A stretch of 64,000 nucleotides of DNA, taken from positions 118,544,001 to 118,608,000 of the forward strand of contig NC_082707.1 of the NCBI RefSeq assembly GCF_030144855.1, written 5' to 3'. Positions 2,733 to 60,128 of this stretch are shown piece after piece. This DNA comes from Hypanus sabinus. Its lineage: Eukaryota. The first letter of the stretch is position 1. The number at the start of each line of letters is the position of its first letter. The notes under the pieces are model-generated. The model ran no database searches and had not been told where the DNA came from. It was given only the letters and a program-made list of their open reading frames with translations. The position numbers and the translations under genes are program-made.

Positions 2733-2847
2733 GAACAACACATACACAAAAAAAAGAGTACAGTCAACGTTTCGGGCTGAGACCTTTGTTGAAGGGTCTC
2801 AGCCTGAAATGTTGATTATACTTTTTTTCATAGATGCTGCCTGCTGA
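2733..2847. mobile_element. Head-to-head pair of PLE 3'-tail/hammerhead fragments (fold-back)
   Basis: gtcaacgtttcgggctgagaccttt followed by gttgaagggtctcagcctgaaatgttgat forms an inverted repeat. Both arms match the PLE tails at 4327-4466 and 50204-50335. Confidence 0.8.
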
Positions 2848-2854
2848 CACAAAA

Positions 2855-3090
2855 CAACCATTTCATAACTCTTGGCAGTGACAAGAAACCTGATTCTGAT
2901 CCTGACCGGCTTGTTCAAGCACTTCATGATGGTGGATGTTAGAGCCACTAGGCAGCAGTAATTAAGGCATTTTATCTTGTTTTTCTTAGACACTGGGTTG
3001 ATAATAGGTTTCTTAAAGCAAATTAAAACCGGCGGAGGTGAGAAATGTCTCCAAATACCCTGTCTAGCTGATCTGTGCAGGATCTAAGGA
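2855..3090 (-). pseudogene. Rex1/Babar LINE RT fragment
   Basis: ORF 2799-2993(-) KKNKIKCLNYCCLVALTSTIMKCL matches the Rex1 motif PKK...CLNDYRPVALTSxIMKCFERL. Confidence 0.75.
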
Positions 3091-3149
3091 GATGCAGTCT
3101 TCATGTTGGGGTATTTGATGTCAGTTTCTTCAAATGTGGTGAACATTGC

Positions 3150-3470
3150 TTTTGTGCCGTCCTTCAAGATGGTGAAGCATTGCCTCCTTAAAGTGCTGTA
3201 GCCCTTCTGAAGAAGATGCTTCCATAATGTTATTCAGTTAGGGCATAAACCGGTATCGATGGGGAAAAAATAGTAATTTCTTCTTCTCAGGATGGTGTGT
3301 GACTTGGGAAGACAGAAAGCTTTAGAGTTGTGGGAGATGCTGTGGGAAAAGCTTTAGCAATCATTGCTTTGCATTGTGTAGACGATGTGCATTGCAGCCA
3401 TGGTATGCTGGAAATGAAGGGAGAGAATATCCATGTTGGTCGACAGAGTGCTGTCGGGACTGATGGTTTA
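3150..3470 (-). mobile_element. Degenerate CR1-type LINE 3' fragment
   Basis: caggatggtgtgtgacttgg-type antisense 3' sequence. A related plus-strand piece lies at about 33180-33300. Confidence 0.4.
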
Positions 3471-3596
3471 TTCTAGATGTGATGTGCTTATGTATGCAAT
3501 TACTCTCTTGCATGTGCGTTAACTTGGGTAGACAGCCAGAGGCAAACTCACAGGCTTATGGAGATATTCATTTGCTCACAATCATTATTTTACACT

Positions 3597-4466
3597 CAAC
3601 AAGATCCCACCACCAAGCACATCTTTCCCTCTGCCCCATCTACCCACTTTCCACAGGGACTCCCTTGTCCAGTCATCTCTCCCCACCAATCTCCCTCCTG
3701 GCAAGTGGAACAAGTGCCATACCTTCTCCCTCACTACCATTCAGGCCTAAACAGTCCTTCCAGGAGAGGTGACACTTCACCTGTGAGTTTGTTGGGGTCA
3801 CCTGCTGTACCTGGTGCTCCCAGTGTGGCCTCCTGTAGCACCAACAAAGATTGGGAGACTACTTTGCTCAGCGCCAATGCTCAGTCTGCCTGAAAAAGTG
3901 GGACCTCCTGGTGGACGCCCATTTTAATTCTGTTTCCCATTCCCACTCTGACATGTTAGTCCATGGCCTCCTCTACTGTCGCGATGATACCACACTGAAG
4001 ATGGAGGAGCTACACTTTGCATTCTGTCTGGGTAGCCTCCAACCTGATGGCGCGAACATTGATTTCTCAAACTTACGGTAATTCCCCACCCCTCCCTCCC
4101 TTCACCATTCCCATTCCGTTTCCCTATCTCACTTTATCTCCTTACCTGCATCTTCCATCATCTTCCTCTGGTGCTCTTTCCCCTTCTCCAACCCTTTATC
4201 TTTTTCACCAATCAACTTCCCAGCTCTTACTTCACCACCCCCTTCTGGTTTCACCTATCACCTATATGTTGCAGTTTTCCCTCTCCTCCTCACGCCTTCT
4301 TACTCTGACTTCTCATCCTTTTTCTCCAACCCTGAATAAGGGTTTCGATCCAAAACATTGGGTGTTTACACTTTTCCATAGATGCTGTCTGGCCTGCTGA
4401 ATTCCTCCAGCGTTTTGTGTGTGTTGCTTGGATTTCCAGCATCGGCAGATTTTCTCTTGTTTGTGA
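3597..4466 (+). mobile_element. Penelope-like element (Neptune-type), 5'-truncated: GIY-YIG end, pyrimidine-rich 3' region and HHR-bearing tail
   Basis: ORFs QDPTTKHIFPS and LGDYFAQRQCSV..DLLVDAHFNSVSHSHSDMLVHGLLYCRDDTTLKMEELH..LGSLQPDGANIDFSN are paralogous to 23035-23358 and 49437-49976. The tail ends cagattttctcttgtttgtga. Confidence 0.9.
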
Positions 4467-5261
4467 TTCTTTTATACTTACTGGGTTCACAATTGCCTTC
4501 TTGCTCAGGCATGCATAATAAACACTCATTTGTAGCTATGTTTGCACATTTTACACACTTCTGTGCATGCAGAGCATGGTGACAGCAGTATGGCCTCCTG
4601 CTTGTGAGTAGTTCAACATACTCTAGGGAATGCCTGACTAGAATCCTACCAGATTGTGAAATCACTACTAGTCCTAAAGGCAAAATGTATGGATCAGTGA
4701 GGCTCAGAGGAGAAAGTTATAAGATTCAGACAGAACTAAACAGCAAGCGATTTGGACCACTGGCATTTTGTTAGAAATCCACCAGCAGTGATTACTAAAA
4801 GAGTACTGTTAGCCTTGGATTCCACTGATGATATAGAGTTAGATTTAATGGTGTATTAAAGGCCAAGTGAAACAGATGTGCAGAGCTTCAGAAAAATGTT
4901 TGAGCTGAAGAGTTGTGGGTGTGGGGATTAAATGGGAAGTAGTACAAGTGGGTAACTAAATACACATTCAGGGATATGCTCAGAGCAGAAACACTATTGC
5001 TAAAATTACAGAGAATAAGTAAGCAGCTCAGAATCAGCCTGAAGGCAGGATAAAATTAAAATTACGGTCCTGGTAATCAGAGTACTGGGACTTAGAAGTC
5101 ATTTGAGGATAGTGAAACATGAATGAAGAAGACAGCATAGCAGGAAATTCTGGAAAGGAGCCAATGATACTAGGTTTGATACAAACTAAATGTATGATCA
5201 AGAACATATGGGTGTTTTATGAGAGATTTTGCCTAAAGCTGCTTGTATCAGACATCTTGTC

Positions 5262-5465
5262 CTTCAGATGAGATGTTAAGCCACAAACTCTGCAGGACCA
5301 TGTTGGAAAGGGAAACACTTTCCCAGTGTCCAGTTAATATTCATCTGGCAAATTGTAACTGTTCTGTTTGTGGGAGCTTGCTGTGCACAAATTGGCTGCC
5401 AGCTGTAAAGGATTGTGTGTATCCTGGAAGTTGTGAGGAATATAGAAGCAAACATGACTTTTTTT
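5262..5465 (+). mobile_element. DeuSINE/SacSINE1-like remnant
   Basis: tcagatgagatgttaagc...ctgtttgtgggagcttgctgtgcacaaattggctgcc matches the Deu-domain core. Confidence 0.65.
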
Positions 5466-10049: not shown

Positions 10050-11480
10050 CCGTTGGGTTAACTTTAGCGATGGGCAAATTATTGGAGTTGATTCTAAGGA
10101 AAAGTATGAGCCTTCCTAGAGAAAGTTGTAGATTAATTGGGTACAACCAGCATGGATTTGCTAGGGGAAGGTCAAGTCTGAATAACTTGATTTAATTCTT
10201 TGAGGACATTTGGTGAGAGTGGTGTGGCGTTTAGAAAGGCTTCATATTAGCAAGCTGGTCAAAGAGTAAAGGTCCAGTGGCAAGTTGGATCCAAAATTGG
10301 CTCAGTGGTGTTGTTCAGGACACTTTTTTTTAAACTGCAGGGCAGTCCCAGTGGGAATCCATAGAACTCTAAGCTCAGTCCTTGTTTTACATAAAATACA
10401 GTTCTGATTTATTATATGTAGTAAAGTAGTATCTATGATATGAGTGTAGGGTTCAGAAGTTCACAGCCAACAATGTTGAATGCAGAAACAGCATCATGTT
10501 TAAGAATTTCTAGGATGAGTAACTGAAATGCTGTGATCTAAATGTAGGGGATGTGATGAAGAATTTTAGAGGTAATCAATACTTGTAGTTTACAGTGAGG
10601 GGGAAAACTTCAAACAGTAGGAAGATATAGGTGACACACACCAAATGTTGGAGGAACTCAGCAGGCCAGGTCTATGATCCTGCTGAAGGGTCTCAGCCTG
10701 AAACATCATCCGGACTCTTTCATAGATGCTGCCTGGTCTGCTGAGTTCCTCCAGCATTTTGTGTGTGTTGCTTGGATGTCCAGCACCTGCAGATGTTTTC
10801 TTGTTTGTGATAGGAAGATACAAGTCATTTGTGCCAAAGAATTTCAAGTAGAATTTAATTTATAGAGTTGAAATAGTCCAGGTAGAGAAATGCGACAAGG
10901 TCAAGAGAATATACAATTAATGGGATAAACTTGAATGGTGTGGTGGAACAGAGAATCATGGACTGTGAAAGGTAGCAAAGTAAGTCAATAAGATAGTTAA
11001 TACGTATGGATTATTTTCCTCTGTTAGACAAAGCATAAAATATATAAGCAAGGAGGTTATGGTAGAACAGTACACCACACTAGGTAGGCCTCAGCTTGAC
11101 TATTCTTGCTGTTCTGGTCAGCAGACTATAGGAGAGATGTGATTGCTCTGGAGCAAGTACAAAGGAGATCAATGAAGTATTGCTATGACTGGAGTTTTGT
11201 AGCTATGAGGAAAGACTGGATAAGATCAAGTTGTTTTCTTTGAAATAGAGTAGGTTAAGAAGGGACCTGAAAAAGGTATAGAAAACAGAGGGGTTTAATG
11301 CAAGTAAGGAGATCTGTTTCCTTTCGCAGAAGAGATATAGATTTAAAGTAACTGTTAGAAGTATTACAGGACAAATAAGGCAAATAAATCACCTGAAAAG
11401 TAGTAGAGGTTTAGAACACACAGTCTGCAAGGTTGGTTGAGATAGAAACCTACATAATATTTAAGTGTTCAAGGATATTT
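10050..11480 (+). pseudogene. Highly degenerate CR1 LINE (RT to 3' end), interrupted by a PLE tail
   Basis: aaccagcatggatttgctaggggaaggtca (QHGF.GRS), ggtaggcctcagcttgactat (RPQLEY-like) and CR1 3' motifs. Confidence 0.6.
10633..10810 (+). mobile_element. Short non-coding PLE-tail element with hammerhead motif and 5' inverted segment
   Basis: HHR-like CTGCTGA-A-GGG-tctcag-CCT-GAAAC at 10680-10704, with the tail running to gtttgtga at 10810. 10634-10670 is an inverted copy of 10732-10767. Confidence 0.85.
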
Positions 11481-13629: not shown

Positions 13630-14995
13630 ACAAATAGAAAAAAAACCTGAATTACAGTAAGTATATTTATGTGTATTAAATAATTTAATTCAAATAAGTA
13701 GTGCTAAAACAGAAATAAATTGAAAATCATAATGAAGTAGTGTTCATGGGTTCAATGTCCATTTAAAAATCAGATGAAAAGGGGAAGAAGCTGTTCCTGA
13801 ATCTCTGAGTGTGTGCCTTCAGGTTTCTGTACTGCCTTCTTTATGGTAACAAGTGGGCATGTCCTGGGTGGTAGAGGTCCTTAATGATGGGCACTGCCTT
13901 CCTGAGGTACTGCTCCTTGAAGATGTCATGGAAACTACGGGGGTAAGTACCCATGATGGAGCTGACTAATTTTGCAATTTATTGCAACTTTGATCCTGTG
14001 TGATAGCCTTCCCCCTTTGCCAGATGGTGAAATAGCCAGTCGGAATGCTCTCCGCGGTTAATCTGTAGAAGTTTTCGAGTGTTTTAGGTGACAAACCAAA
14101 TCTCTTCAAACTCCTAATGAAATATAGCTGGTCTTGCCTTCTTTATTGCTGCTTCAATATGTTGCATCCAGGTTAGGTCCTCAGAGATATTGACACCAGG
14201 AACTTGAAATTGCTCACTCTCTCCACTTCTGATCCCTCTATCTGGATTAGTGTGTGTTCCCTCATCTTACCCTTCCTGAAGTCCACAATCAGCTCTTTGG
14301 TTTTACGAATGTTGAGTGCAAGGTTGTTACTAGGACCCCACTCAATTAGCTGGTATATCTTGCTCCAGTACACCCTCTCGTCACCATCTATGATGCTGCC
14401 AGCAATGGTTGTATTATGAGCAAATTTATAGATGGCATTTGAGCTCTACCTAGCCGCACAGACAGTCATGGGTGTAGAGAGAGTAGAGTAGTGGGTTAAG
14501 CATACATTCCAGTGGTGCTCCTGTGTTGATTGTCAGTGAGGTGGAGATTTTTTTTACAATCTGCACAGATTGTGGTCTTCTGGTTAGGTAGTCGAGGATC
14601 CAGTTGCAGAGGCCCAGGTTCTGTAGCTTTTCGATCAGGACTGTAGAAATGGTGGTGTTGAATGCTGAACTATAGTCAATGAACAGCATACTGACATAGG
14701 TCTCTGTATTGTCCAGGTGATCAAAGGGAAGCCATTGAGGTTGCATTTGCCATAGACGTATTGTGATGCTTGAGAAATTGCAGTGGGTCCAGGTACTTAC
14801 TGAGACGGGAGTTGATTCTATCCTCTCAAAGCATTTCATCACTACAGATGAGAGTGCTACTGGACAATAGTTGTTAGGCAGCTCATGATGTTCTTCATGG
14901 GCACTGGTATAACTGTTGCCCTTTTGAGGCAGGTGGGAACTTCTGACCAGAGCAATGAGAGATTGAAAATGTCTTTGAATACTCCTGCCAGTGGA
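13630..14995 (-). pseudogene. Rex1/Babar LINE (RT, C-terminus, 3' UTR)
   Basis: ORF 14450-15034(-) [76 protein letters not shown]; ORF 14173-14373 NNLALNIRKTKELIVDFRK. Confidence 0.9.
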
Positions 14996-15408
14996 AAAAT
15001 GCTGTGGAATTTTGCCCCTATGATCTCTCCACACATCCCACCTCTCTTCTTTTATTTAGTATTTAGATGATTTGCACATCACTGGAAAGATTAATTTTTT
15101 GTAATCCATTCCTTTGAACCTGAGTCTTGTTTGAAGACTATGGAGGTTAACTTATAGTCATTGATGTCAGGGTTCAGATTCATGTACAGGTCAGACCAGG
15201 TAAGGATTGGGAGTTTCCTTGCCTTTAGTGAAGCAGGCGGGCTCTCACAGCACCTAGTAGCTTCATGTTCACTTCTACGGACACTAGCATTTTATTCCAT
15301 ATTAATTTCATAACTTTGAGTTTAAAGTTCATAGATGCCAAGGTAGGTTTTGCTCTGGCCCCTCTTGCTTCTAGCCTCCCAATCTGCACCACACCTGCTC
15401 TATTTCCT

Positions 15409-21094: not shown

Positions 21095-21648
21095 CATACA
21101 CAAGAGAAAATCTGCAGACACTGGAAATTCAAGTAACACATGCAAAATGCTGGAAGAATTCAGCAGGTCAGGCAACATCTATGGAAAAAAATCCTGTTGA
21201 TATTTCGTGCTGAGACCCTTAGGCAGTACTAGAGAAAAAAAGTTGAGGAGCAGACAAAAGATGGGTGAGAGGAGAGAGAAGCACAAGGTGACAGGTGAAG
21301 GGAGGGGGAAGGATGAAGTAAAGAGCTGGAAAGGATTGGCAAAAGAGATACAGGGCAGGAAAAGGGGAGTCCTATAGGAGAGGACAGAAGGGCATGGAAG
21401 AAAGAAAGGGGTGCAGGCAAGGAGATAAAATGAGAGAAGGAAAAGGGAAATGGTGGACATTATCAGAAGTTGGAGAAATCAACAATCATGCCATCAAGTT
21501 GGAGGCTACCCAGCTGGAATATAAGGTGTTGCTCTTCCAACCTGAGTGTGGCTTCATTGCGACAGTAGAGGAGGCCATGGATTGACATAATGCAATGGGA
21601 ATGGGAAGTGGAATTAAAATGGGTGGCCATTGGGAGATCCTGCTTTGA
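21095..21648 (-). mobile_element. Inverted PLE 3' segment (GIY-YIG C-terminus, 3' repeat and HHR motif)
   Basis: The reverse complement encodes DLPMATHFNSTSHSH..SIHGLLYCRNEATLRLEEQHLIFQLGSLQLDGMIVDFSNF*, followed by the tail with an HHR remnant at 21194-21230. Confidence 0.9.
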
Positions 21649-21689
21649 GATATGCAGATACGAATTCAGTGGGGCAGGACAGACAGGAT

Positions 21690-23445
21690 CCCACTAAGGA
21701 GCACCAGGTCATTGTCTCCCACACCATCACTGAGCTTTTTAGCTCAGGGGGTCTCCCATCCTCTGCCACCAACCTCATAGTTCCCGCACCCTGTACCTCC
21801 CATTTCTAACTCCTACCCAAGATCCACAAACCCGATTGTCCAGGTAGACCCATTGTTTCAGCTTGTTTCTGCCCCACTGAACTCATAACTGTGTACCTCA
21901 ACTCTGTTTTATCCCACCTAGTTCAGTCCCTTCTACATCCTACATCCATGACACTTCACATGCTCTGGATCTTTTCAATAATTTCATGTTCCCTGGTCCC
22001 CATCATCTTTTTTTCACAATGGCTGTCTAGTCCCTATACACCTCTATCCCCCACCAGGAAGGCCTCAAAGCTCTCTGTTTCATTCTGGACACCAGACTCA
22101 ACCAGTTCTCTTCCACCACCACTCTCTCCGTCTAGCAGAATTTGTCCTCACTCTTAATAATTTCTCCTTTTGGTCCTCCCACTTGCGTCAAACAGAAGAT
22201 GTAGCCATGGGCACTCGCAGAGGTCCCAGCTATGTCTGCTTTTTTTTCCAGCTACATGGGCCAGTCTATGTTCCAAGCCTACATCAGTGTCACTCCCCCA
22301 CTTTTCCTTCACTACATGATGACTGCATTGGTGCTGCTTCCTAAACTGATGTGGAGCTCGTTGACTTAATCAACTTTGCTTACAACTTCCACCCTGCCTT
22401 CAAATTTACCTGGCCTATTTCTGACACCTCTCTTCCCCTTTCTCGATCTTTCTGTCTGTATCTCTGGGGATAGCTTAACTACTGATGTCTATTATGAACC
22501 CACAAACTCTCACAGCTATTTGTACTATACCTCTTCCCACCCTGTTACCTGTAAAAATGCCATACCCTTCCCTCAAACTTATCAGTCTCCATCGCATCTG
22601 CTTTCAATGTGAAGCTTTTCAATCTAGAACATGTCTTTCTTTTTCAAAAAAAAGGGCTTCCCTTCCTGCACCATCAATCCATTTTATGCACATCTGCTCT
22701 TATCCTATCCTCCTGCCACCCTATCAGAGATGAGGTTCCTCTTGTCCTCACCTACCATCCCATCAGCTCTGCATCCAGCACATAATTCTCTGTAACTTCC
22801 ATCATCCACCATCTCCAGTGGGATCTCACCACCAAGCACATTTTCCCTCTTCCCTCCCCCACCTCCCCACTTTCTGCTTCCGGCAGGGATCTCTCCCTAC
22901 GCAACTCCCTTGTCCATTCACCCCTCCCCACTGATAACCCTTCTGGCACCTATCCTTGCAAGAGGAATAAGTGCTATACCTGCCCCTACACCTCATCCTT
23001 CACTACCATTCAGGGCCCCAAACAGTCCTTCCAGGTGAGGCAACACTTTTCTTGTGAGCTTGTTGGGGTCATACACTATGTCCGCTGCTCCTGGTGTGGC
23101 CTCTTGTATATTAGTGAGATCCAACGTAGATTGGGAGACCGCTTCACCAAGCATCTACGCTCCATCTGCCAGAACAAGCAAGATCTGCTAGTGGCCACCA
23201 ATTTTAATTCCACTTCCAATTTCCATTCAGATATGTCAATCCATGGCCTCTACTGTCGAGATGAGGCCACACTCTGGTTGGAGGAACAGTGCCTTATATT
23301 CCGTCTGGGTAACCTCCAACCTGATGGTATAAACATCAATTTCTTGAACTTCCAGTAATGCTTCCCCCACCCCTTTTTCCTCTCTCACCCTATCTCCTTG
23401 CCTGTCCAACACTTTCTTCTGGTGCTCCTCCCCACTTTTCTTTCT
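21690..23445 (+). pseudogene. Penelope-like (Neptune-type) RT + GIY-YIG endonuclease, degenerate
   Basis: LLPKIHKPDCPGRPIVSAC..PTEL; SLYTSIPHQEGL; LTLNNFSF; VAMGT..GPSY; PFLDLSV..SLTTDVYYEPTNSHSYL; C-x4-C-x2-C linker; GVIHYVRCSWCGLLYISEIQRRLGDRFTKH. Confidence 0.92.
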
Positions 23446-28330: not shown

Positions 28331-29030
28331 GAGCACCAGTCCTTTCAGTAATGAAATTAGGAATAGCCTATGCACACAGCATTGTAGAAAACACAGAATT
28401 TTTCACTTTAAAGTGCAAATTGATTCGGGGGTGGGGGGGGGGGGTGGCTCCATTACTAAAATTGAAAGGCTATTGCACTACTCATGACAAATATTAGTAG
28501 TGGTTTATAGTTATGGTGTGGGTATATGAAGATACATTACAGAATAGTGACAGGATCAAACACTTGAGGCCTTGTCATGTTCCTTTTGTGCATTGCCAAA
28601 ATCTGCACCTCTACCATCCTGCAAGGTCACTGAATTTAATTTGGCCAGCCATCTAAGTTCTGTGCCTGACTATCTAGGATAATTAAATTGACCCAAATTC
28701 TATTAATCATTTACATGGCAAAAGCCAGGAATGTGAAGGAATACTCTCCAGTGGACCTCTCATGATGGACTTCCATCATGCAGGAAAAGGTGGCTGTTGA
28801 ATTCGCAAAGCTAGAAGATAGAGAACAAAGCCAGCACACAAAATAAACCTTTAGTTGTATACACCAGGATGCCTTTCTTAGACCTGAAGATGGATGACAG
28901 TGGCATGTGAAGAGTAAGCAGAGCAAAGTGTATGTGATAAAGCATCTTGTGGAATTTCTTCACAGCAAAGATGATTCCCAAGGCTTGCTTCTAGATTTGT
29001 CCATGGTTCCTTTCTGCTGTAATCAGTGAT

Positions 29031-32751: not shown

Positions 32752-33046
32752 TGTGTTTGCTCACCTATAACTACTGATGAGACCCAAAGCCAGGAGATAG
32801 ACCATAGCTGAAACACAAAATAAAATTTATTCAATAAAACCATGCAGCCAAAAAACTCAATGGTGCTTCTGAAACATGACTATTTAAATGGTTTATGAAG
32901 ACGTCGTTAGGAACAATGACCAACCAGTGAAAGTCAGACTGAGATTAGTTGTCAGCCGACAAATGGGCATTGGTTGTTGTGGCTTGCCATGACAGTAGCC
33001 TGCTGGATTGCTGCCCTGAATATTCACTCCCTCCATCACTGACACA
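32752..33046 (-). repeat. 5' LTR of the Gypsy element (about 295 bp) followed by PBS
   Basis: TGTG...CACA termini, minus-strand TATA-like tttaaata (32881-32888) and AATAAA (32826-32832). PBS-like TGGCGAC lies just internal (plus-strand gtcgcca, 32739-32745). A partial second copy is at about 28790-28848. Confidence 0.7.
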
Positions 33047-38900: not shown

Positions 38901-39859
38901 TGGGTAATTCATTGTTCGTACAAATGCAATGTTAATAGTAGCACTGCCCTAGAGAATCTATAATTTGAGCAAATCTCTAATTGACAGTGGCCAGCAGACT
39001 GATCTTCCAGCAGATGGGTGGTTGTCACTCTGTACTTGGCTTGGCTTCAAGGATGCTTGTTGCAGGCCTTAGAGTCTTCACACTGTTAGCTCAAGCTGAT
39101 AATCTGATTGGACAGTATGAAATACTCATAGACAGCACCTGACTGTTGATGCTTACTCCTCAAAAAACTGAAATTTATGCATGGATGTTGTATTGAAGAG
39201 ATCTAGGTGTGGATGATAGTTTTGGACATCTGTAACCACATTGGTTCAGATGTACTCAGCAAACTTCTTGACTTTGAGGAGTGCTTTTCAAAACTAGTGT
39301 TCTTTCTTCAAGATGGAGTCACTGTAACTCTTCCATCTTAAAAATGCTTTAATCCTTGACATTCTCCTGGTGATCACTCTACAAAGATAATGGATGCCAG
39401 TTAATTGAGACACATCAGGAACAGTACATTTTCCCCAATTAAGAGGCTGCCCAATTTAGCCGAAATTCAATTGGAAATAGTTAAAAAGATATTTTAAAAA
39501 AAGGCAAATTAATGATTTAACTGAGTAACAATTTATGTATTTAAATGAAATACAGAAAAAATTAGAACTCTCTACCAATACACTTACAGTACTATAAAAC
39601 TCTGTATTAACAATGGAGGAATTTATTCAGTGTACGCTGCTGTGTTCTTTTGAAAACTGCAAATGAACAAAATCAGTACAGACACCTAGTGCAGACAGTA
39701 GACTGCCTTCATGCCATGCTTTTGATTTTTATATCTGACAATTCTTCATTTTAATTGTATTATTCAAGTTGACTGTCAATACCTTCAAATTCTTCTTCGT
39801 TCTTAACTTGTTGAAGTTGTGAAATTGTTTCATTTTCATTTCCAGCCTTTCTCGTATCT

Positions 39860-39953
39860 CCAAGTAATACACACAGAATGCTGGAGGAGCCAGGCAGCAT
39901 CTTTTGAAAAGAATAAACAGCCGATGTTTCAAGCTGAAACCCTTCAATAAGAC
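39860..39953 (-). mobile_element. Short PLE-tail/HHR element
   Basis: Reverse complement gtc-ttattga-aggg-tttcag-ctt-gaaac-atc-ggctg..gatgctgcctgg..ccagcattctgtgtg; ctccaa is repeated on both sides. Confidence 0.8.
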
Positions 39954-40273
39954 ATCTACAGCTCCAAACCTGAATGCTTGAAACCACAATGAGCAAAACA
40001 GTTCTGAATAGTCTTACTGCTTATTTATCGCCAACTATTAGTGACAAATTTTGCTGCTTTTTGAACACAAGCACACGTAACTGATGCTATTTAAAAATTG
40101 TTCACTCTCAAGAAGGTGTAATATCTAACAGCCACACAAGTGCACACAACTGTAGCCAGTTAGAAACTATTCGGCAACAGTCTGCTGACCCAACTAAGCA
40201 TCATAGTATCCCAAATAAAAGGAATCCAGGTTATTTTGTTGATTAATTTTTATTCTTTAAGAGTTGTCCCAAC

Positions 40274-45484: not shown

Positions 45485-45800
45485 TTTCCTCAAGTGTTCT
45501 GGTTAATATCCAATGAAACAAATACCTTATTGCCTTATCATTGTTTCATTGTCTCTGTGTAAATTGGCTACCATGTTTCCTACAGTTGAACAATGGCTAT
45601 ACTTTAAAAAAAACATGCACTTGAAATACTAACTTTACTTCTCCCCCATGGATGCTGCCTGAATTGCTGTGTATTTGCTACTTTTATTTCATATTTTTAA
45701 TATCCACTGTACTTTGTAATCAAAAGTAATTTATGAGCTTTGAAATACTTTGCAATGTCCTCAGGATATGAAGAGCACTGTTATAGCAAGTTTTCCCTTT
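45485..45800 (+). mobile_element. DeuSINE/SacSINE1-like 3' half
   Basis: tgtgtaaattggctaccatgtttcctacagt..aaaagta..tttg..gtcctcagga..gcactgttatagcaagt. Confidence 0.5.
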
Positions 45801-47755: not shown

Positions 47756-48380
47756 TGTATTTCATTTGCCACTTTTTTGCCCATTGTCCTAATCTATTTA
47801 ACTCTTTTTGCAGCCTACCTGTTTCCTCAACGCTACCTGCCCCTCTGCCAATCTTCATATCCACTGCAAACTTGGCAGCAAAGCTATCTATTCCATCATC
47901 TAAATCTTTGATATACAGCATAAAGAGAAGTGGTCGCAACACCTAACCCTGTGGAACACCACTAGTCACTGGCAGCCAACCAGAAAAGGATCCTTTTATT
48001 CCCAGTTGCTGACTCCTACCAATCAGCCAATGCTCCCAGAAACCCCTGCCATTGCTGCTCAGCTGTCATTCCTGCCAGTGTTCCCTTCCAATCAATTTTC
48101 ACTACCTCCCCTCTCATGCTTCTGTAATTCCCTTTACTCTAATGTAATACAGATCCATCTGACTTTAGCCTCTCCCTCTCAAATTGCAGGGTGAATTATA
48201 TCATATTATGACCACTCCCCTAAGGGCACCTTCACCTTAAGCTCTGTAATGAATTCTGGTTCTTCGAACAGCAACCAATCCAGAATAGGTGATCCCCTAG
48301 TGGGCTGAACTATGAGCTGCTCTAAAAAGCCATCTCATAGGCATTCTACAAGTTCCCCTCTTGGGATCCAGCACCAACCT
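47756..48380 (-). pseudogene. CR1 fragments
   Basis: LRPLLFMLYIKDLDDGIDSFAAKFAVDMKIGRGAGSVEETGRLQKELNRLGQWAKKWQMKY. Same subfamily as 23447-25650. Confidence 0.85.
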
Positions 48381-49154
48381 TCAGTGACAATCTCTCTGAC
48401 AACAGAAGTTCATCCCCAACCACTAACCACCACCTTGCTCCTGTACTCCTGACTTATGCAGTATCACATTGCAGTCTGTAAGAAATTTCTGTGTGTACTC
48501 TGTAAGAACTTCATGGCTTCTAAACCTTCAGGATGTCCTGTGAAATGCAATACAGCATATAAATTCAGGAGTTTCTTGATTGATCGTTCCCTATGGAAGC
48601 TGTCAGTCGTTTGGCAGAGATCTCAGGGACCAGAATATTTAAACAAGCATCAAGACTTTGTTTGGCTGGCGGTGAATGTGTTAAGTTGGAAACTGGCATG
48701 AATGCTGCCTCTTCCTGCCCTGAAACAAAAATAACCAGGGTGGAGCAACAGTTTGGTAATTACGAAGTGAGAGCTCTATCTGCCCTCATAACTACCCCCT
48801 GTGATCGAGGTTTGGACTGGAGGGGGGCTGCTGGACTTTATGTCTTTGCTGCCACTCAGTGTTCAAGTGCCATCAAAGTGTGGGGGCAGCTGCTCCCACT
48901 AACTCTCATCACATCCCACATATGAAGATTTCCCAAACACAGAACCTCTGAGCGTGAGAAATCTGTGAGCAAGGCTTTTCCTGCTGTTATATATACACTC
49001 TCATTCCCAGCAGTAATTAAATCCAGATGGATGGTAAACGCAGCATGGAAATCAATTAATGCACATGGCTTATTTATTAACTTTTCTGGAACAAAGGCGC
49101 AAAAGCTTTATTCCTTGGCATGTATTGGAGGAGAATGATAAAATGTCAAAATGC

Positions 49155-50335
49155 TATCCCTTTCTCTCAATTCCTCCGCCTCCGCCGCATCTGCTCTCAG
49201 GATGAGGCCTTTCATTCTAGGACAAAGGAGATGTCTTCCTTTTTTTAAAGAAAAGGGCTTCCCTTTGGCCACTATCAACTCTGCCCTCCATCACGTCTCC
49301 CGTATTTCACGCACCTCTGCCCTCACCCCATCCCCCTGCCAGCCCACCAGGGATAGAGTCCCCCTGGTCCTCACCTATCACCCTACCAGTCTACAGATCC
49401 AACGTATAATCCTCCATAACTTCCACCATCTCCAACGTGATCCCACCACCAGCCACATCTTCCTCTCCCCCCCCACTCTCGGCTTTCCGCAGGGATCGCT
49501 CCCTACGCGACTTCCTTGTCCATTCATCCCCCCCATCCCTCCCCACCGACCTCCCTCCGGGCACTCATCCCTGCAAACGGAAGAAGTGCCACACCTGCCC
49601 CCACATTTCTTCCCTCACCACCATCCCAGGCCCCAGACAGTCCTTTCAGGTGAGGCACCACTTCACCTGCGAGTCAGCTGGGGTGATATACTGTATCCGG
49701 TGCTCCCGATGTGGCCATTTATGCATTGGGGAGACCCGCCGCAAACTGGGAGACCATTTCGCCGAACACCAGCGCTCAGTCCTCCAGCAGTGGCGGGAGC
49801 TCCCTGTGGCCACACATTTCAATTCCACAGACCACTCCCACTCCGACATGTCTGTCCATGGCCTCCTCTACCGTCAAGATGAGGCCACACGTAGGTCGAT
49901 GGAGCAATACCTTATCTCCCGCCTAGGTAGCCTCCTACCTGCCGGCATGAACATCCAACTCACAGACCTCTGTTGATACCCCTGCCCCCCCTTACCCCCA
50001 TCCCCATCTATTATTTTAGTCTGGTTCTCTTTCTGTCTCTTTTTTCCCCCCTCACTATAATCTCCCCCAGCCCTACCTTTCTTTTATTTCCCATAATTCT
50101 CCACCTTCCCCCTAGCCCATTTCCCTCCAGCCTATCACTTCCCAGCTCTCTACTTTATCCCTCCCCCCACTTCTTATCCCCCCTCGACCTTCTCATGTTA
50201 CTTCACTCCTGATGAAGGGTTTCGGCCCGAAACATCGTCACTACCTCCTCCCATAGATGCTGTCTGGCCTGCTGAGTTCTGCCAGCATTTTGTGTTTTTA
50301 TTTATTTCCAGCATCTGCAGATTCACTCATATTGT
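49155..50335 (+). mobile_element. Penelope-like (Neptune-type) element, best-preserved copy: RT thumb, Zn linker, GIY-YIG and 3' tail
   Basis: AIPFSQFLRLRRICSQ..FFKEKGFP..DRVPLVLTYHPTS..; GTHPCKRKKCHTC; FTCESAGVIYCIRCSRCGHLCIGETRRKLGDHFAEH..PVATHFNS..GMN. Many CpGs retained. Confidence 0.95.
50204..50241 (+). ncRNA. Minimal hammerhead ribozyme motif (intact catalytic boxes) in the PLE 3' repeat
   Basis: CTGATGA (50209-50215), extra A, GGGT-TTCG-GCCC stem II, GAAA (50229-50232), then C-ATC-GTC. Stem I pairing is poor in this copy. Confidence 0.7.
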
Positions 50336-51090: not shown

Positions 51091-51162
51091 GGTGCATGCT
51101 CTGCAAACTATTCTCCCATCTCTATCAGGTCATCTGATGGTGAAGTGGACAGAATTCACCAG

Positions 51163-51498
51163 AAACAAGAGAAAGTCTGCAGATGCTGTAGATCTGAGCG
51201 ACACACATAAAATGCTGGAGGAACTCAGCAGGCCAGGCAGCATCATGGGGAAAAAAAAGTACAGTTGATGTTTTTGGCTGAAACCCTTCGGCAGGGTTGG
51301 AGAATAAAAGCTGAGGAGCAGATTTGAAAGGTGGGAGGAGGGGAAAGAGAGACGCCAGGCGACAGCTGAAACTTGGAGGGGGAGAGATGAAGCAAAGAGC
51401 TAAGAAGTTGATTGGTGGAAGAAACAGAAGGCCATGGAGGGAAGTGTGAGTGGGGGGAGAGCAGCAACAGAGGGAGGCGATGGGTAGGCAAGGAGCTA

Positions 51499-51533
<35 letters not shown>

Positions 51534-51640
51534 AAATGGATGGGAGATGGAGGTGGAGGCTCTACTGGAAGTTTGAGAATTTGATGTTCATGCCATCAGG
51601 TTGAGGCTACCCAAAAGGAATATAAGATGTTACTCCTCCA
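51163..51640 (-). mobile_element. PLE 3' end (EN C-terminus, 3' repeat with (GA)n, HHR remnant at 51262-51299)
   Basis: Reverse complement EE.HLIF.LGSLN.DGMNIKFSNFQ, then the tail to ctcttgttt. Confidence 0.85.
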
Positions 51641-52109
51641 ATAATGGAATTCACCAGACCATCTTACAAAGACTCTACTTTATTTCTGCTGTGATTCTCT
51701 TTGGCTCAAGGTCAGTTGTACCTGAGTGCAGGAGAGGAGCCATCATGGATAAGAGTAGAAAACTGGGGAAGCTTAGACCCAAGTTCCTCTATTGCCTGAC
51801 ATCATCACTTTCCTTATGTTGGCATACTTTCTGATGGATTCAACAAGAAACTTACTTCAATATGAAAATAAGGCAGAGGAGGGATAGCAGTCTTGCCTGA
51901 CTGAATTTGATTGGAAAGCTTTCCATTTCTCACCTGTTTAGATTCCCATCCACATATTGATTGAATTATTAATGCCCCTGGGGGATGCTCCCCCTCATAC
52001 CCTTTTCGTAGAGCATAGTTGCTCTTCTCCTTTGGGATATCTCTATTGTTCACTGATATGAGAGGCATTACAATCCACTTAACTTTAATCCATCGTCAGC
52101 ACTTCCACT

Positions 52110-52335: not shown

Positions 52336-53104
52336 TGGAGGCACCAGAAAGAATGCTTCTGAGTCAGCTGCTGTTGAGAAACTGTGTGCGAATATTGTTT
52401 GAGCAGGACTTCTCTTGAATGCCAAGGGGAAGGAGGTTCAGTCTGGAGAGGAAGTTCGATGGATAGCTCTCATGTATGTAATGTGTGCTCTGTACTCAGT
52501 CGTATAACACTCATTAGGTCATTCCACATGATGTTTTGGAATCTCAGCCCAGTCTTAAGTCTTGGCTGCTTACTCAAGTTATTATGTTTTACAACTTTCC
52601 TCTCCTCCAGTCAACACCTCAGACTGGTATCAGTATTGAAATGGTTTGGAAGATTTGTGCTAATCCTGCTACCTTCTGAAATCTAATCCTTCTAGTGTAT
52701 ACATGTAATAGGATATAAAGCATATTTGTTCATTACTTTTAAAAAGGTGAGGACGTGCTCACCAACGTCCTAACCAATATTTTCCTTGGCCAACAAATTA
52801 TCAAGTCACTGCTGATCTTGATCTTGCTGAATGCAGATATATAAAGCCAGTAGAATATTGTATGTAGGGAAGACCAAAGAATCATAACTAATAAATCCAC
52901 TAAGTAATTTCTGGGGCACTTCTTTATGCAAAGTTAAAATATGAAACTTGCTACTATAAGGAATTGAGGCTAATTGCTTTGATATATTTAAAGGGAAGCT
53001 GGAAAAATTAATGTAGGAGATAAGAATAGAAAAATACTGGTGTGAATTACTGGCACAGATCAGTTGGCCTGAATTATCAGGTTTCTGAATACTATATGTT
53101 TATT

Positions 53105-53250
53105 ACAGCACATATAAAATGCTGGAGGAACTCAGCAGGTCAAGCAGGTTCTATGGAAAAGAGTAAATAGTTAAATAGTCGACGTCTCAGGCCAAGACCC
53201 TTCATCAAGTCCTGGATTTCCAGTATCTGCAGATTTTCTCGTATTTATGA
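53105..53250. mobile_element. Short PLE-tail/HHR element with an internal inversion
   Basis: 53105-53212 is the tail on -, with HHR ttgatga-aggg-tcttgg-cct-gaga-c-gtc-gacta. 53212-53250 is the terminal part on +. Confidence 0.8.
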
Positions 53251-53879
53251 CTATATTTATATCTCTCCTTACTTAACTATCCACCTTTGCCTGTTATGTT
53301 GTTAACCTGTAACTTGTCCTCCCAATAATCCAAAGCAACTTCTTTTCAACATTTTCTTCCTCTCACGAGACAACAGTGCCAGTTAAAAATGTAGCCACCC
53401 CTCCCCAATTTAATATTTCACGTATAGCTTTGATGAAAAAGTGAGCAATACAAATCATGAAGTCCTGGTTCTGTTACTTATCAGTCTTCTTGAGAACAGT
53501 AAGCAATAGGGCTACTGGTTGCAATTACTTGGAGAATATCCCAGTGTATCAACTCAAGTTGAATTTTATCACATGTGATTCATATACTCTGACTTTTGCA
53601 TTGCTTACAAATGTGTTACCAATCAGCTGAAAATGGTAGTGTGGATTTAAGCAGCTCAAAGGTGAAGTAAAGCTCCAAGAAGATTCCATCTTATCTTTGA
53701 TGATGGCAGCATGTGTGAAGAAAAAACAAAGCTGAAACATGTTTGGAACTTCTGAGTGGAGGATGCACTTTAGCTACAAGGTCCTCACCCTGACAAAAAG
53801 TCATCCTTCAATTGAATCAATACATTTCACATAATAGCATGACATTACTGGGATCTCATTTAGAAAACTTCAAGATATT

Positions 53880-56790: not shown

Positions 56791-57019
56791 ACAAAAAAAT
56801 TAGGCTGGCATCTGAAATTCCTATATGATAATGGATTTCATCTATTTCCTGTAAGCTTGCTCCCACCCCCTCTTTTCCCTTGCAGTTTCTGCTAGCTCTA
56901 AGGACATCTCACAACTAAATGCATCTGCTCCTGTCAGCTTTCAGAATTTCAAAGGGACTGTCCCCAGCACAATTCCCAGCTCTGCTGATGGTACTTCCGT
57001 GGAATTGTATGTGCATTTA

Positions 57020-57200
57020 GTTCTGTGTTTCCTGTTGCTTGTGGAAATCCACTTCCACTCTGACCATCTGACTGTGGTCTTCTGAACTGTAACACTGTGG
57101 TACAACAGTATCTTGAGGAATAACACCTCAATAACACTTTGAGGATCATCCATCTTGACAACCTTATGGACTCTACTTCAAATTCCACCACTTCAAGAAA
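57020..57200 (+). pseudogene. Very degenerate PLE endonuclease C-terminal remnant
   Basis: cctgttgcttgt..cactctgac..ggtcttctgaactgt..cttgaggaataacacctc resembles PVA.HF..HSD..GLL.C..LEEQHL. Confidence 0.4.
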
Positions 57201-57377
57201 TGCGATTTTTCTGCCTATTTCAGAACTACCTATTTCAGGTCATTCATCTATGATATTGGCCTGCTTGTTCTTTCTATAAGTAAAGCCTGCTCTTCTGATA
57301 ATTTCCTATTATAGTGAAGATTCACCGGGTTCCATGGCAAGTTTGATATATGAGAATATATGATATATGGGATGAGT

Positions 57378-57508
57378 GAGGTAGCACAGTGGTAGAGTCA
57401 CTGCTTCACAGCTCCAGGGTCTCAGGTTCAATACTAACCTTGGGTGCTGTTTGTGTGGAGTTCACATGCCCTCGCTGTCACCGTATCAGTTTCCTTCAGG
57501 TGTTCTGT
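57378..57508 (+). mobile_element. V-SINE (HE1-like) 5' part, truncated by a CR1
   Basis: A-box gtagcacagtgg, B-box caggttcaatac, V-domain tgtgtggagtt. Confidence 0.75.
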
Positions 57509-57509
57509 T

Positions 57510-59627
57510 GAAGCATAAGTTGGAAACAGATGTTCTCAGGGAAACGTACGGAAGAAATGTGGCAAATGTTCAGGGGATATTTGTGTGGGGTTCTGCATAA
57601 GTATGTTCCAGTGAGACAGGGAAAGGATGGTAGCGTACAGGAACCGTGGTGTACCAAGGCTGTTGTGAATCTTGTCAAGAAGAAAAGAAGAGCTTACGAA
57701 AGGTTCAAAAAAACTAGGTAATGATAGAGATCTAGAAAATTATAAGGCTAGCAGGAAGGAGCGTAAGAATGAAATTAGGAGATCCAGAAGGGGCCATGAG
57801 AAGGCCTTGGTGGACAGGATTAAAGAAAACCCCAAGGCATTCTACAAGTATATGAAGAGCAAGAGGATAAGACGTGAGAGAATTGGACCAATTAAGTGTG
57901 ACAGTGGAAAAATGTGTATGGAACTGGAAAAGATAGCAGAGGTATTTAATGAATACTTTGCTTCAGTATTCACTATGGAAAAGGATCTTGGCAATTGTAG
58001 GGATGACTTGCAGTGGACTGAAAAGCTTGAGCATGTAGGTATGAAGGAAGTGGATGTGCTGGAGCTTCTGGAAAGCATCAAGTTGGATAAGTCACTGGAA
58101 CCGAATGGGATATACCCCAGGCTACTGTGGGAAGTGAGGGAGGAGATTGCTGAGTTTCTGGCGATGATCTTTGCATCATCAATGAGGATGGGAAAGGATT
58201 CAGAGGATTGGAGGGTTGTGGGTGTTGTTCCCTTATTCAAGAAAGGGAGTAGAGATAGCCCAGGAAATTATAGGCCAGTGAGTCTTACTTCAGTGGTTGG
58301 TAGGTTGATGGAGAAGATCCTGAGAGGCAGATTTATGAACATTTGGAGAGGTATAATATGATTAGGAATAGTCAGCATGGCTTTGTCAAAGGCAGGTCGT
58401 GCCTGTCAAGCCTAATTGAACTTTTTTGAGGATGTGACTAAACACATTGATGAAGGTAGAGCTGTAGATATAATGTATATGGATTCAGCAAGGCATTTGA
58501 TAAGGTACTCCATGCAAGGCTTATTGAGGAAGTCAGGAGGGATGGGATCCAAGGGGACCTTGCTTTGTGAATCCAGAACTGACTTGCCCACAGAAGGTAA
58601 AGAGTGGTTGTAGACGGGTTCATATTCTGCATGGAGGTCAATGACCAGTGGTGTGCCTCAGGGATCTGTTCTGGGGCCCCTTCTCTTCATTATTTTTATG
58701 AATGACCTGGATGAGGAAGTGGAGGGATGGGTTAGTAAATTTACTGATGACACAAAGGTTGGGGGTGTTGTGGATAGTGTGGAGGGCTGTCAGAGGTTAC
58801 AATGGGACATTGATAGGATGCAAGACTGGGCTGAGAAGTGGCAGATGGAGTTCAATCCAGATAAGTGTGAGGTGGTTCATTTTGGTAGGTCAAATATGAT
58901 GGCAGGATATAGCACTAATGGTAAGATTCTTCGCAGTGTGGATGATCAGTGGGATCTTGGGGTCCAAGTCCATAGGACACTCAAAGCTGCTACGCATGTC
59001 GACTCTGTGATTAAGAGGCATATGCTCCATTGGCCTTCATTATCCGTGGGATTGAGTTTAAGAGCTGAGAGGTAAAGTTGCAGTTATGTGGGACCCTGGT
59101 CAGACCCCACTTGGAGTACTGTGCTCAATTCTGGTCGCCTCACTACAAGAAGGACGTGGAAACCATAGAAAAGATGCAGTGGAGATTTACAAGGATGTTG
59201 CCTGGATTGGGGAGCATGCCTTATGAGAATAGATCGAGTGAACTTGGCCTTTTCTCCTTGGAGTGATGGAGGATGAGAGGTGACCTGATAGAGGTGTACA
59301 AGATAATGAGAGGCATTGATCATGTGGATAGTCAGATGCTTTTTCCCAGGGCTGAAATGGCAACCAGCAGAGGGCATAGTTTTAAGGTGCTTGGAAGAAG
59401 GTACAGAGGAGATGTCAGGGGTAAGCTTTTTACGCAGAGAGTGGTGGGTGCGTGGCCGGCAGCGGTGGTGGAAAGGGTCTTTTAAGAGACTCCTGGATAA
59501 GCACATGGAGCTTAGAAAAATAGAGGGCTAAGGGTAAGCCTAGGTAGTCCTAAGGTAAGGATATGTTCAGCACAGCTTTGTGGGCTGAAGGGCCTGTATT
59601 GTGCTGTAGGTTTTCTATGTTTCTATG
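57510..59627 (+). pseudogene. CR1 LINE ORF2 (about 2.1 kb)
   Basis: ORF 57672-58361 IKENPKAFYKY..EDWRV..PLFKKGSRDSPGNYRPVSLTSVVG; 58641-59075 TSGVPQGSVLGPLLF..KFTDDTKVGG; tail ttctatgtttctatg. Confidence 0.95.
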
Positions 59628-60000
59628 AAAAGCAATGCAGTATAGTAGGCCTATTTAGAAGACTGAGAGGTGATCTCCATGAAGTCATCAAGATACAAGA
59701 AAGGTGATTTTCCCTGGTTGGTGAGTATAGAACTGGGTTGAATAGGAGTAGACCAGTTATAAATGAGATAGAGAAATTTCTTCTCTATATAGGTGGTGAA
59801 TCTTGGGAGTTCACTACCCTTGAGGACTGTAGAGGCTCAGTCATTGATTGTATTCAGAGGTTGTTTTCTGGATATTAAGGGAATCAAGGGAGATGGGAAT
59901 AATGCTGGAAGGCAGAGTTGTAATAGATCAGCCAGGATCTTCTGCTGTTAATTCTTGTGTTCTTAGGTTGTTATTCCCATTGATGGTTGTACAATTTTCA

Positions 60001-60128
60001 ATCACAAACAAGAAAAAATCTGCAGATGCTGTAAATTCAAGCAACACACAGAAAATGCTGGAGGAACTCAGCTGCAGTTATGGGAAAGAGTACCATTGAC
60101 AGTTCGGGCTGAGACCCTTCAATAGGAC
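60001..60128 (-). mobile_element. Short PLE-tail/HHR element
   Basis: Reverse complement gtc-ctattga-aggg-tctcag-ccc-gaac-tgtc..ctgagttcctccagcatttt..cagattttttcttgtttgtga. Confidence 0.8.

What the first reader, a model, noticed from the sequence alone, without database searches (positions are those of the whole stretch)
2733..60128. Candidate SINE-like family of short non-coding ribozyme-headed units (about 60-135 bp) with a shared 5' boundary at the hammerhead
Seen: five loci (2733-2847, 10676-10810, 39860-39953, 53105-53250, 60001-60128) contain only the HHR plus the downstream PLE tail. In each, homology starts within about 5 nt of the CUGAUGA box (the - arm at 2786 breaks just inside it), whereas the long copies (3597, 21095, 49155, 51163) extend far upstream. 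Inference: random 5' truncation should not hit the same point five times. This suggests either an independent non-autonomous retrozyme-like element mobilised by PLE RT/GIY-YIG, or a structure-defined RT stop or template switch at the ribozyme. The boundary is the 5' edge of the ribozyme rather than the predicted cleavage site, which is unexplained.
Basis: partly seen in the sequence, partly recalled or inferred. Interest (0 to 1): 0.7.

Follow-up and report, generated by a model that had tools for sequence, protein, structure and literature searches.

The report
Short Penelope tails sharing one start
Five tiny retrocopies of the end of an old Penelope-like retrotransposon in a ray or shark genome all begin at the same base next to the element's hammerhead-ribozyme motif. 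That is too sharp for random truncation and suggests the element's RNA has a fixed 5' end there, but nothing shows a separate SINE family.

Summary
The window has nine 3' ends of one old Penelope-like element (PLE). Four extend 0.5-1.2 kb upstream into GIY-YIG coding remnants. Five lose all homology 1-2 nt 5' of the CUGAUGA box: four within ±1 nt, and one is a palindrome centred in the box. Target-site duplications show that at least three are complete short insertions. Chance truncation is excluded (P ≤ 2e-4).

The units are more complex than described. Three, perhaps four, carry inverted arms, and the last ~40 nt (the PLE 'tail') can be missing or inverted. Arms end at two 3' sites, about 90 and 131 nt from the box. 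These are published PLE insertion signatures.

The units are not retrozymes: no tandem arrays, ends not at the cleavage site, ribozyme cores mostly decayed. No separate SINE lineage is detectable: star tree, no diagnostic substitutions.

My best reading is inferred, not shown. PLE reverse transcriptase starts at its internal sites and runs off a discrete RNA 5' end at the ribozyme's edge.

The scan had already found this family on other pieces of this genome (truncated tails, fold-backs). The sharp boundary is the new detail.

The parts
2733..2787 (-). Inverted arm of a fold-back short unit. Its outer end lies at 3' site 1 and it has an internal ~40-nt deletion.
   Evidence: 0/500 shuffles reach the arm-to-arm score
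2784..2847 (+). Direct arm of the fold-back unit. It starts in or at the CUGAUGA box and its 3' part is lost. No target duplication was found.
3597..4469 (+). Long 5'-truncated PLE copy (873 bp): GIY-YIG coding remnant, 3' UTR, ribozyme motif and tail. Target duplication at 3588-3596 / 4470-4478.
10630..10677 (-). Inverted arm holding only the proximal tail. It ends at 3' site 1 and abuts the direct arm at the shared boundary.
   Evidence: 0/500 shuffles
10678..10810 (+). Complete short unit (box to 3' site 2; 131 nt from C3). One target duplication, 10618-10629 / 10811-10822, encloses both arms.
21098..21657 (-). PLE 3' end of ~560 nt. It is the inverted arm of a head-to-head complex.
21700..23418 (+). 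Direct partner copy with reverse-transcriptase and endonuclease coding remnants. Its 3' UTR end, ribozyme motif and tail are missing. The start coordinate is approximate.
39834..39859 (+). Likely terminal-tail segment, inverted in place relative to the adjacent short unit. Unexplained.
   Evidence: 10/1000 shuffles against the tail at 53211
39860..39952 (-). Short unit (box plus proximal tail). Its 5' boundary is at 39952. No target duplication was found.
49138..50335 (+). Long 5'-truncated PLE copy (~1.2 kb). It is the only copy with both hammerhead boxes and helix II intact.
51165..51646 (-). Long 5'-truncated PLE copy (482 bp). Target duplication at 51152-51164 / 51647-51659.
53105..53210 (-). 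Short unit (box plus proximal tail) that ends at 3' site 1.
53211..53251 (+). Terminal ~40-nt tail, inverted and joined to the 5' boundary of the short unit. The target duplication 53095-53103 / 53252-53260 encloses both pieces.
   Evidence: (E 5.6e-5)
60003..60127 (-). Complete short unit (box to 3' site 2).
60128..60141 (-). Fourteen extra nt between the 5' boundary and the target duplication (59991-60002 / 60142-60153). Origin unresolved.
45620..45671 (+). Weak, more diverged fragment of a related tail. Its boundaries cannot be defined.
   Evidence: (E 5.9e-4)

Best explanation
The short loci are dead-end retrocopies of only the last ~100-135 nt of an old Penelope-like element, made by the element's own enzyme. 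The element is Neptune-type by its zinc-finger linker.

Proposed steps:
1. Complementary DNA synthesis starts at one of two internal start sites on the element's RNA, about 90 and 131 nt 3' of the hammerhead box.
2. Synthesis runs to a discrete RNA 5' end 1-2 nt upstream of the box and falls off there. This gives every short copy the same 5' edge.
3. The free cDNA end is then joined to the target either directly or by jumping onto a second cDNA primed from the other target strand. This makes the inverted arms of variable length and puts the ~40-nt 'tail' at either end.

Most simply, the discrete 5' end is the start of the element's transcript inside its terminal repeat. An RNA longer than one unit would then carry the start sites twice, once near its 3' end and once within 135 nt of its 5' end. 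Initiation at the 5'-proximal copy would yield the short units.

Shown here: the boundary, the target duplications, the arms and the two 3' ends. Inferred: the RNA 5' end and the order of events.
For: - The boundary falls at the same 1-2 nt in four independent insertions, and a fifth lies within 5 nt. It is non-random.
- Target duplications enclose whole short units, including their inverted arms. So each unit is one insertion event.
- Direct arms always end at the fixed point. Inverted arms end at varied points: the tail only at 53211-53251, the proximal tail only at 10630-10677, and a mirror copy at 2733-2787. This is as expected if one cDNA runs off an RNA end and the other is caught unfinished.
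- Arms end at two 3' sites, 89-95 and 123-138 nt from C3. In each two-arm unit where both outer ends survive, only one arm carries the tail.
- This geometry matches the anole PLE. There reverse transcription starts internally at two adjacent sites, the ~34-nt tail lies between them (about 91 and 125 nt from C3), both target strands are cut and extended, and an RNA of roughly +20 to +172 suffices as template (PMC11167929).
- In that system cDNA length follows the RNA 5' end across the ribozyme, so there is no intrinsic stop.
- Inverted 5'-truncated copies and one-sided tails are described as general PLE features (PMC8557442).
- The Penelope terminal repeat contains the transcription start (PMC2377424).
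- Short and long copies have similar branch lengths in a star tree, which fits by-products of the same burst.
Against: - No RNA data could be obtained.
- No full-length copy lies in the window, so I could not check that an upstream terminal repeat begins at the same base.
- In Drosophila virilis Penelope the transcript starts about 120 nt upstream of the ribozyme (46 nt after splicing), not at its edge.
- A profile search found no long PLE protein that begins with the peptide encoded by the ribozyme-tail region. So the analogy 'unit start lies at the ribozyme, as in the anole element' is untested here.
- Only five short copies were seen, in one 64-kb window.
- Two details do not fit simply: the tail inverted in place at 39834-39859, and the 14 extra nt at 60128-60141.
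Confidence: 0.45

Rival explanations
1. The short unit is a self-propagating SINE-like element. It would carry an internal promoter with its start at the boundary, as Penelope's promoter lies downstream of its start site. Its read-through RNA would be copied because the PLE enzyme initiates internally. Short copies would then beget short copies.
For: - The short unit contains the whole region that suffices as template in the anole PLE.
- Penelope's promoter is internal.
- Short copies are as numerous as long ones (5 against 4-5) in this window.
- Non-autonomous PLE derivatives are known in other lineages.
Against: - The tree is a star and short copies are not clustered (3 label changes, the same as shuffled labels).
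- There are no significant diagnostic substitutions, and identities are equal within and between the classes.
- No tRNA-like head is present.
- Ages are similar to those of the long copies.
- The power of these tests is low (9 copies, ~130 nt, ~25% divergence).
Confidence: 0.15
2. Reverse transcriptase arrests or switches template at the 5' edge of the ribozyme or of the protein-binding region on longer RNAs. The boundary would then be a truncation hot spot and not an RNA end.
For: - The boundary coincides with the edge of the conserved core.
- Three of five junctions are template-switch-like joins to inverted sequence.
- The PLE protein binds this RNA region and assists ribozyme folding.
Against: - A structural block should stop the enzyme on the 3' side of a structure, not after it has copied all of it.
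- In the anole system product length tracks the RNA 5' end from -126 to +200 with no fixed stop, and ribozyme mutants do not change product size.
- The sequence just upstream in the long copies is an unstructured pyrimidine tract.
Confidence: 0.2
3. The short units are solo terminal repeats left after recombination between the two direct repeats of full-length insertions.
For: - The canonical full structure is an inverted arm, then the upstream repeat, body and downstream repeat. Its collapse would give exactly the layout seen at 10630-10810.
- The target duplications are retained.
Against: - It needs full-length insertions to have been about as common as truncated ones, whereas PLEs show heavy 5' truncation. 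The window has none.
- The repeats would be only ~135 bp.
- It still needs the repeat to begin at the same base, so it presupposes the discrete RNA end.
Confidence: 0.1
4. The pattern is chance coincidence of random truncation points, or an artefact of homology detection.
For: The sample is small and the copies are old and decayed.
Against: - Simulation gives P ≤ 2e-4 under every null tried.
- Target duplications prove that the units end there.
- The identity profile drops from ~70% to chance within 2 nt.
Confidence: 0.02

Closest known systems
5'-truncated Penelope-like element insertions with pseudo-LTRs, inverted arms and a one-sided 30-40 bp tail (Craig et al. 2021, PMC8557442; Cervera & de la Peña 2014, PMC4209133)
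   Same: - RT plus GIY-YIG remnants upstream.
- A minimal hammerhead motif near the 3' end.
- An inverted 5'-truncated copy abutting the direct copy.
- A ~40-nt tail on one end only.
- Target duplications.
- Most ribozyme motifs dispersed as single, truncated copies.
   Different: The literature describes truncation as variable. Here about half of the copies share one 5' end to within 1-2 nt, at the ribozyme's 5' edge.
Poseidon element of Anolis carolinensis (PAc): internal initiation of reverse transcription (Frangieh et al. 2024, PMC11167929)
   Same: - Two 3' ends, about 90 and 125-131 nt downstream of the hammerhead core, with the tail between them.
- Both target strands are primed.
- The ribozyme-proximal RNA suffices as template.
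- Even the motif just 5' of the core is similar (CAACC before CTGA.GA).
   Different: - It belongs to a different clade (Poseidon; this element has the Neptune-type linker).
- The RNA around the first start site is GU-rich here, not AC-rich.
- No class of short genomic copies with a fixed 5' end was reported for PAc.
- Nothing was tested biochemically here.
Non-LTR retrozymes of animals (Cervera & de la Peña 2020, PMC7229834; Li et al. 2026 preprint, 10.64898/2026.07.22.740005)
   Same: Short non-coding sequences that bear a hammerhead motif, are related to PLE terminal repeats and are thought to be mobilised by PLEs. 'Monomer' derivatives are reported.
   Different: - Retrozymes are tandem arrays of 170-400 nt units with canonical type I ribozymes, and they are processed at the cleavage site into circular RNAs.
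- These units are dispersed single copies with the PLE's own 3' end and a minimal, mostly decayed core.
- Their boundaries are unrelated to the cleavage site.
SINEs that borrow the 3' tail of a partner retroelement (general knowledge; not tested against a library)
   Same: Short, non-coding, flanked by target duplications, with a 3' end identical to that of an autonomous partner.
   Different: - No polymerase III-type head (no tRNA-like sequence).
- No evidence of a separate lineage.
- The whole unit is collinear with the partner's 3' end.
Twin priming / 5' inversion of LINE-1 (general knowledge)
   Same: Two cDNAs primed from the two target strands and joined head to head within one target duplication, as at 53104-53251.
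   Different: In LINE-1 the junction positions vary. Here one arm always ends at the same base.

Membership tests
Penelope-like elements (canonical EN+) | Single ORF with a reverse transcriptase followed by a C-terminal GIY-YIG endonuclease | tested here: met
   - Translations of 22126-23343 and 49138-49964 align with ray and shark proteins that carry the YIDD reverse-transcriptase motif.
- RT motifs (LPKIHK, RPIVSA) are seen at ~21.8 kb.
- The endonuclease block (VIY.I.C..C...YIGET) with a C-x4-C-x2-C linker is read directly.
- Caveat: Pfam's own models gave no hit on these decayed pieces.
Penelope-like elements (canonical EN+) | Minimal hammerhead motif in the terminal repeat | tested here: inconclusive
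   - The CUGAUGA-helix II-GAAAC(G/A)UC layout is recognisable across the copies.
- Only 50208-50240 keeps both boxes.
- Position A6 is A, C or T in three copies each.
- Rfam: no hit at gathering; 13.5 bits against 34; none for the best copy.
- Activity was not tested.
Penelope-like elements (canonical EN+) | Insertion signatures: an inverted 5'-truncated arm, a 30-40 bp tail on one end, and target duplications | tested here: met
   compared with PMC8557442 and PMC11167929
Non-LTR retrozymes | Tandem head-to-tail repeats of the unit | tested here: not met
   No tandem arrays. All profile hits are dispersed or inverted.
Non-LTR retrozymes | Canonical type I hammerhead, with unit boundaries set by self-cleavage | tested here: not met
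   Rfam Hammerhead_1 is below threshold. The unit starts ~25 nt 5' of the predicted cleavage site and ends ~105 nt 3' of it.
Non-LTR retrozymes | Expression as small circular RNAs | not testable with these tools
SINE | Head derived from tRNA, 5S or 7SL with an internal polymerase III promoter | tested here: not met
   No tRNA-like sequence in the window. No Rfam family at gathering.
SINE | Own lineage of master copies, distinct from the autonomous partner | tested here: inconclusive
   Star tree. Short copies are not clustered, and the one-clade hypothesis is not rejected (p-AU 0.28).
SINE | 3' end shared with the mobilising element | tested here: met
   The short units are collinear with the last 100-135 nt of the long PLE copies.

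The most novel reading that the evidence does not exclude
The ~135-nt unit is a true PLE-dependent short retroposon, a SINE analogue with a ribozyme motif as its head. Transcription would start at the boundary from a promoter inside the unit. Any read-through RNA would be a valid template because the PLE enzyme initiates internally. That would make it the first vertebrate SINE-like family driven by Penelope machinery, and it would give the conserved ribozyme-proximal region a role as promoter and enzyme-binding site, not as a cutter.
Probability: 0.12. Interest if true: 0.7.

Novelty: new member of a known kind. Interest (0 to 1): 0.42.

Why it matters
Little is known about how Penelope-like elements copy themselves, where their template RNA begins, or what their conserved hammerhead motif is for. 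A class of genomic copies that all begin at one base beside the ribozyme core would be a fossil record of the template's 5' end, or of a fixed switching point. Elasmobranch genomes appear to hold very many such copies. With whole-genome copies and RNA 5'-end data, the question becomes directly testable. It would also say whether the many dispersed 'single hammerhead motifs' reported in animal genomes are random debris or a defined product of the PLE mechanism.

Tried and rejected
3. Scans of viral and metagenome contigs for a 20-nt tail motif. There were no viral hits, and the six metagenome hits were chance matches in bacterial genes.
4. Upstream homology. Local alignments of the 120 nt upstream of each short copy against the long copies' upstream regions scored at chance level. 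This rejects the idea that the short copies are long copies of a sister family.
5. A 9-nt match between the extra 14 nt at 60128-60141 and a long copy's 3' UTR, and a similar word upstream of 39952. My rough estimates give about P 0.02 each. They are not consistent with a shared leader or a splice (no donor or acceptor consensus), so I left them unexplained.
6. Splice-acceptor reading of the boundary, as in D. virilis Penelope. Only one of the four long copies has AG before it, and the short copies carry no common upstream exon. Rejected.
7. Cleavage-product reading. The predicted cut after GAAAC(G/A)UC lies ~25 nt inside the unit. Rejected.
8. Coding test. A profile of the open frame through the tail found only short internal matches in ray gene models (Hemitrygon, Mobula) and no PLE N-terminus. 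Inconclusive.
9. RNAalifold of six tails predicts a 9-bp helix between the start of the proximal tail and the middle of the terminal tail, but its pairs show almost no covariation. This is not evidence.
10. An extra G just 5' of the boundary in 3 of 4 units could be a cap-derived base. One of the three is explained by the adjacent arm and P is only about 0.05, so I do not claim it.

Full report
**What is there.** The window is vertebrate DNA (41% G+C, no gaps). A blastn search with one tail and an nhmmer profile built from all copies find nine 3' ends of a single repeat family:
- Long copies: 4324-4462 (+), 21099-21234 (-), 50202-50333 (+), 51163-51302 (-).
- Short copies: 2784-2846 (+), 10672-10806 (+), 39854-39954 (-), 53105-53214 (-), 60006-60133 (-).
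- Three inverted pieces: 2752-2794, 10622-10704 and 53211-53245.
- One weak, more diverged fragment at 45620-45671.

Nothing else in the 64 kb matches.

**Which family.** Upstream of the four long copies lie decayed coding remnants. Read directly, they show a C-x4-C-x2-C linker and a GIY-YIG-type block, followed by a stop and a ~250-nt pyrimidine-rich 3' UTR. A 190-aa piece finds proteins of Hypanus sabinus and of Rhincodon typus. These carry the YIDD reverse-transcriptase motif and map back to 3552-4069, 21472-21657, 22126-23343 and 49138-49964. RT motifs continue to about 21.8 kb. Pfam models were silent on these pieces.

[quoted passage not shown] By the linker motif, which Craig et al. describe for Neptune and Nematis, it is Neptune-type. 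Earlier notes of this scan on other pieces of the same genome reached the same family assignment.

**Anatomy of the 3' end.** In the sense of the ribozyme motif I distinguish three segments:
- A: the CUGAUGA box, a 4-5 bp helix II, and GAAAC(G/A)UC.
- B: a proximal tail that ends in a GU run.
- C: a terminal ~40 nt.

Arms end at two places, 89-95 nt and 123-138 nt (typically 131) from C3. Seven arms end at the distal site. Three end at the proximal one: the direct arm at 53105 and the inverted arms at 10630 and 2733.

This is the geometry reported for the anole Poseidon element. There reverse transcription starts internally at two adjacent sites, and the optional ~34-nt 'tail' is the stretch between them, at nt 85-119 from the AUG. 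That is about 91 and 125 nt from C3.

**The boundary.** I anchored all copies on G8 of the box.
- From -40 to -8 the short copies are 17-28% identical to the long ones. From -6 to +25 they are 62-77% identical.
- Long copies remain 38-53% identical to each other upstream even without gaps.
- Local alignments of the short copies' upstream flanks against the long copies' upstream regions are at chance level.
- The break is at -7/-6 in four units. The fifth (2733-2847) is a palindrome whose centre lies between about -2 and -7.
- Target-site duplications of 9-13 bp enclose 10630-10810, 53104-53251 and 60003-60141, and also the long copies 3597-4469 and 51165-51646.

So the short units are whole insertions. 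Simulated truncation models give 4 or more of 9 endpoints within 2 nt in 0 of 20,000 draws, or 2e-4 for the most favourable null.

- The unit at 10676 begins at 10630 with an inverted copy of segment B.
- The unit at 53105 has segment C inverted and attached to the 5' boundary.
- The unit at 2733 is a mirror pair.
- Arm-to-arm scores for 10630 and 2733 are reached by 0 of 500 shuffles.
- At 39834-39859, segment C seems to be inverted in place (10 of 1000 shuffles).
- 21098-21657 is itself the inverted arm of a head-to-head complex. Its partner is a direct copy of at least 1.7 kb whose 3' end is lost.

Inverted 5'-truncated arms and a tail on one end only are published hallmarks of PLE insertions. 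In vitro the anole enzyme cuts and extends both target strands. The key regularity here is that direct arms stop at the fixed base, while inverted arms stop anywhere.

**Is it a ribozyme-headed element?** Only as an ancestral inference.
- One copy, the long one at 50208, keeps both boxes.
- Position A6 is A, C or T in three copies each.
- Rfam finds nothing at gathering, 13.5 bits against 34 for one copy, and nothing for the best copy.
- The motif is the minimal, dimer-dependent type described for PLEs.
- The predicted cut, after GAAAC(G/A)UC, lies ~25 nt inside the unit, so self-cleavage does not set either end.

**Is it a separate lineage?**
- Mean identities are 77% (short-short), 75% (long-long) and 74% (short-long).
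- The maximum-likelihood tree is an unresolved star with similar branch lengths.
- The 'short' label needs three changes, as do shuffled labels.
- Holding the short copies together is not rejected (p-AU 0.28).
- There is no tRNA-like head and no tandem array.

So there is no evidence for a SINE-like or retrozyme-like lineage, but the test is weak.

**Most likely mechanism (inferred).** The PLE enzyme binds the ribozyme-proximal RNA and starts cDNA synthesis at an internal site. In the anole system product length follows the RNA's 5' end across the ribozyme, and ribozyme mutants change nothing. So an intrinsic stop is unlikely, and a fixed cDNA end points to a fixed RNA end.

If the element's transcript begins at that base inside the terminal repeat, a more-than-unit RNA carries the initiation region twice. 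(Penelope's repeat does contain the start site and an internal promoter.) Starting at the 5'-proximal copy gives a 100-135 nt run-off product. A second cDNA primed on the other strand, caught at any length, gives the inverted arm after a template jump.

This also answers why the edge is the ribozyme's 5' side. In the anole element the core sits at the very start of the functional unit, next to the start codon.

Weak points:
- There are no RNA data.
- There is no full-length copy here.
- In D. virilis the start site lies ~120 nt upstream of the motif.
- My attempt to show that the region encodes the ORF's N-terminus found only internal matches in ray gene models.

**Rivals.** The rivals are a self-propagating SINE-like unit, an arrest or template-switch hot spot, solo terminal repeats, and chance. 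They are weighed in their own sections.

**Limits.** Collection scans gave no further copies. All quantitative statements therefore rest on nine copies in one window.

**Verdict.** This is a real, sharp and non-random feature of a known repeat family. The family had been seen before by this scan on other DNA of the same genome. The fixed 5' end is the new detail, and it is worth a genome-wide check.

Noticed in passing
window 10723-10810 and the equivalent parts of the other complete tails: Two of the three reading frames through segments B and C stay open in most copies. In 10680-10808 one of them is continuous with the AUG inside the CUGAUGA box. A profile of that frame matched only internal stretches of gene models in Hemitrygon akajei and Mobula birostris. 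So tail fragments are being annotated as coding exons in rays.
   Followed up: partly
window 10727-10735 with 10784-10792, and equivalents: The start of the proximal tail (…AGATGCTG…) is complementary to the middle of the terminal tail (…CAGCATCT…). RNAalifold predicts a 9-bp helix that encloses the most conserved stretch. The pairs hardly vary, so there is no covariation support.
   Followed up: partly
window 39834-39859: The terminal-tail segment lies inverted in place next to the 3' end of the short unit at 39860-39952 (tail-to-tail). It shares the variant CTCGTAT with the tail at 53211-53251. The two-strand priming model does not explain this.
   Followed up: partly
window 49095-49115: About 25 nt upstream of the 5' end of the long copy at 49138 there is a 16-nt match to the reverse complement of that copy's own proximal tail, including its private variant (31 of 500 shuffles). 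It may be a remnant of an inverted arm.
   Followed up: partly
window 58641-59072 (+) and 14450-15031 (-): Reverse-transcriptase remnants (Pfam RVT_1, E 1e-12 and 3e-3). They do not match the PLE proteins and presumably belong to LINEs.
   Followed up: no
window 24125-25000 vs 29033-29896; 24624-24899 vs 47756-48035 and 29541-29804: Other dispersed repeats at 77-85% identity that are unrelated to the PLE tail. The 29-kb ones lie within the stretch 28790-33046, which another note of this scan calls a Gypsy element.
   Followed up: no
window 45620-45671: Fragment of a more diverged tail family (…CCATGGATGCTGCCTGAATTGCTG…) without a recognisable CUGAUGA box.
   Followed up: no
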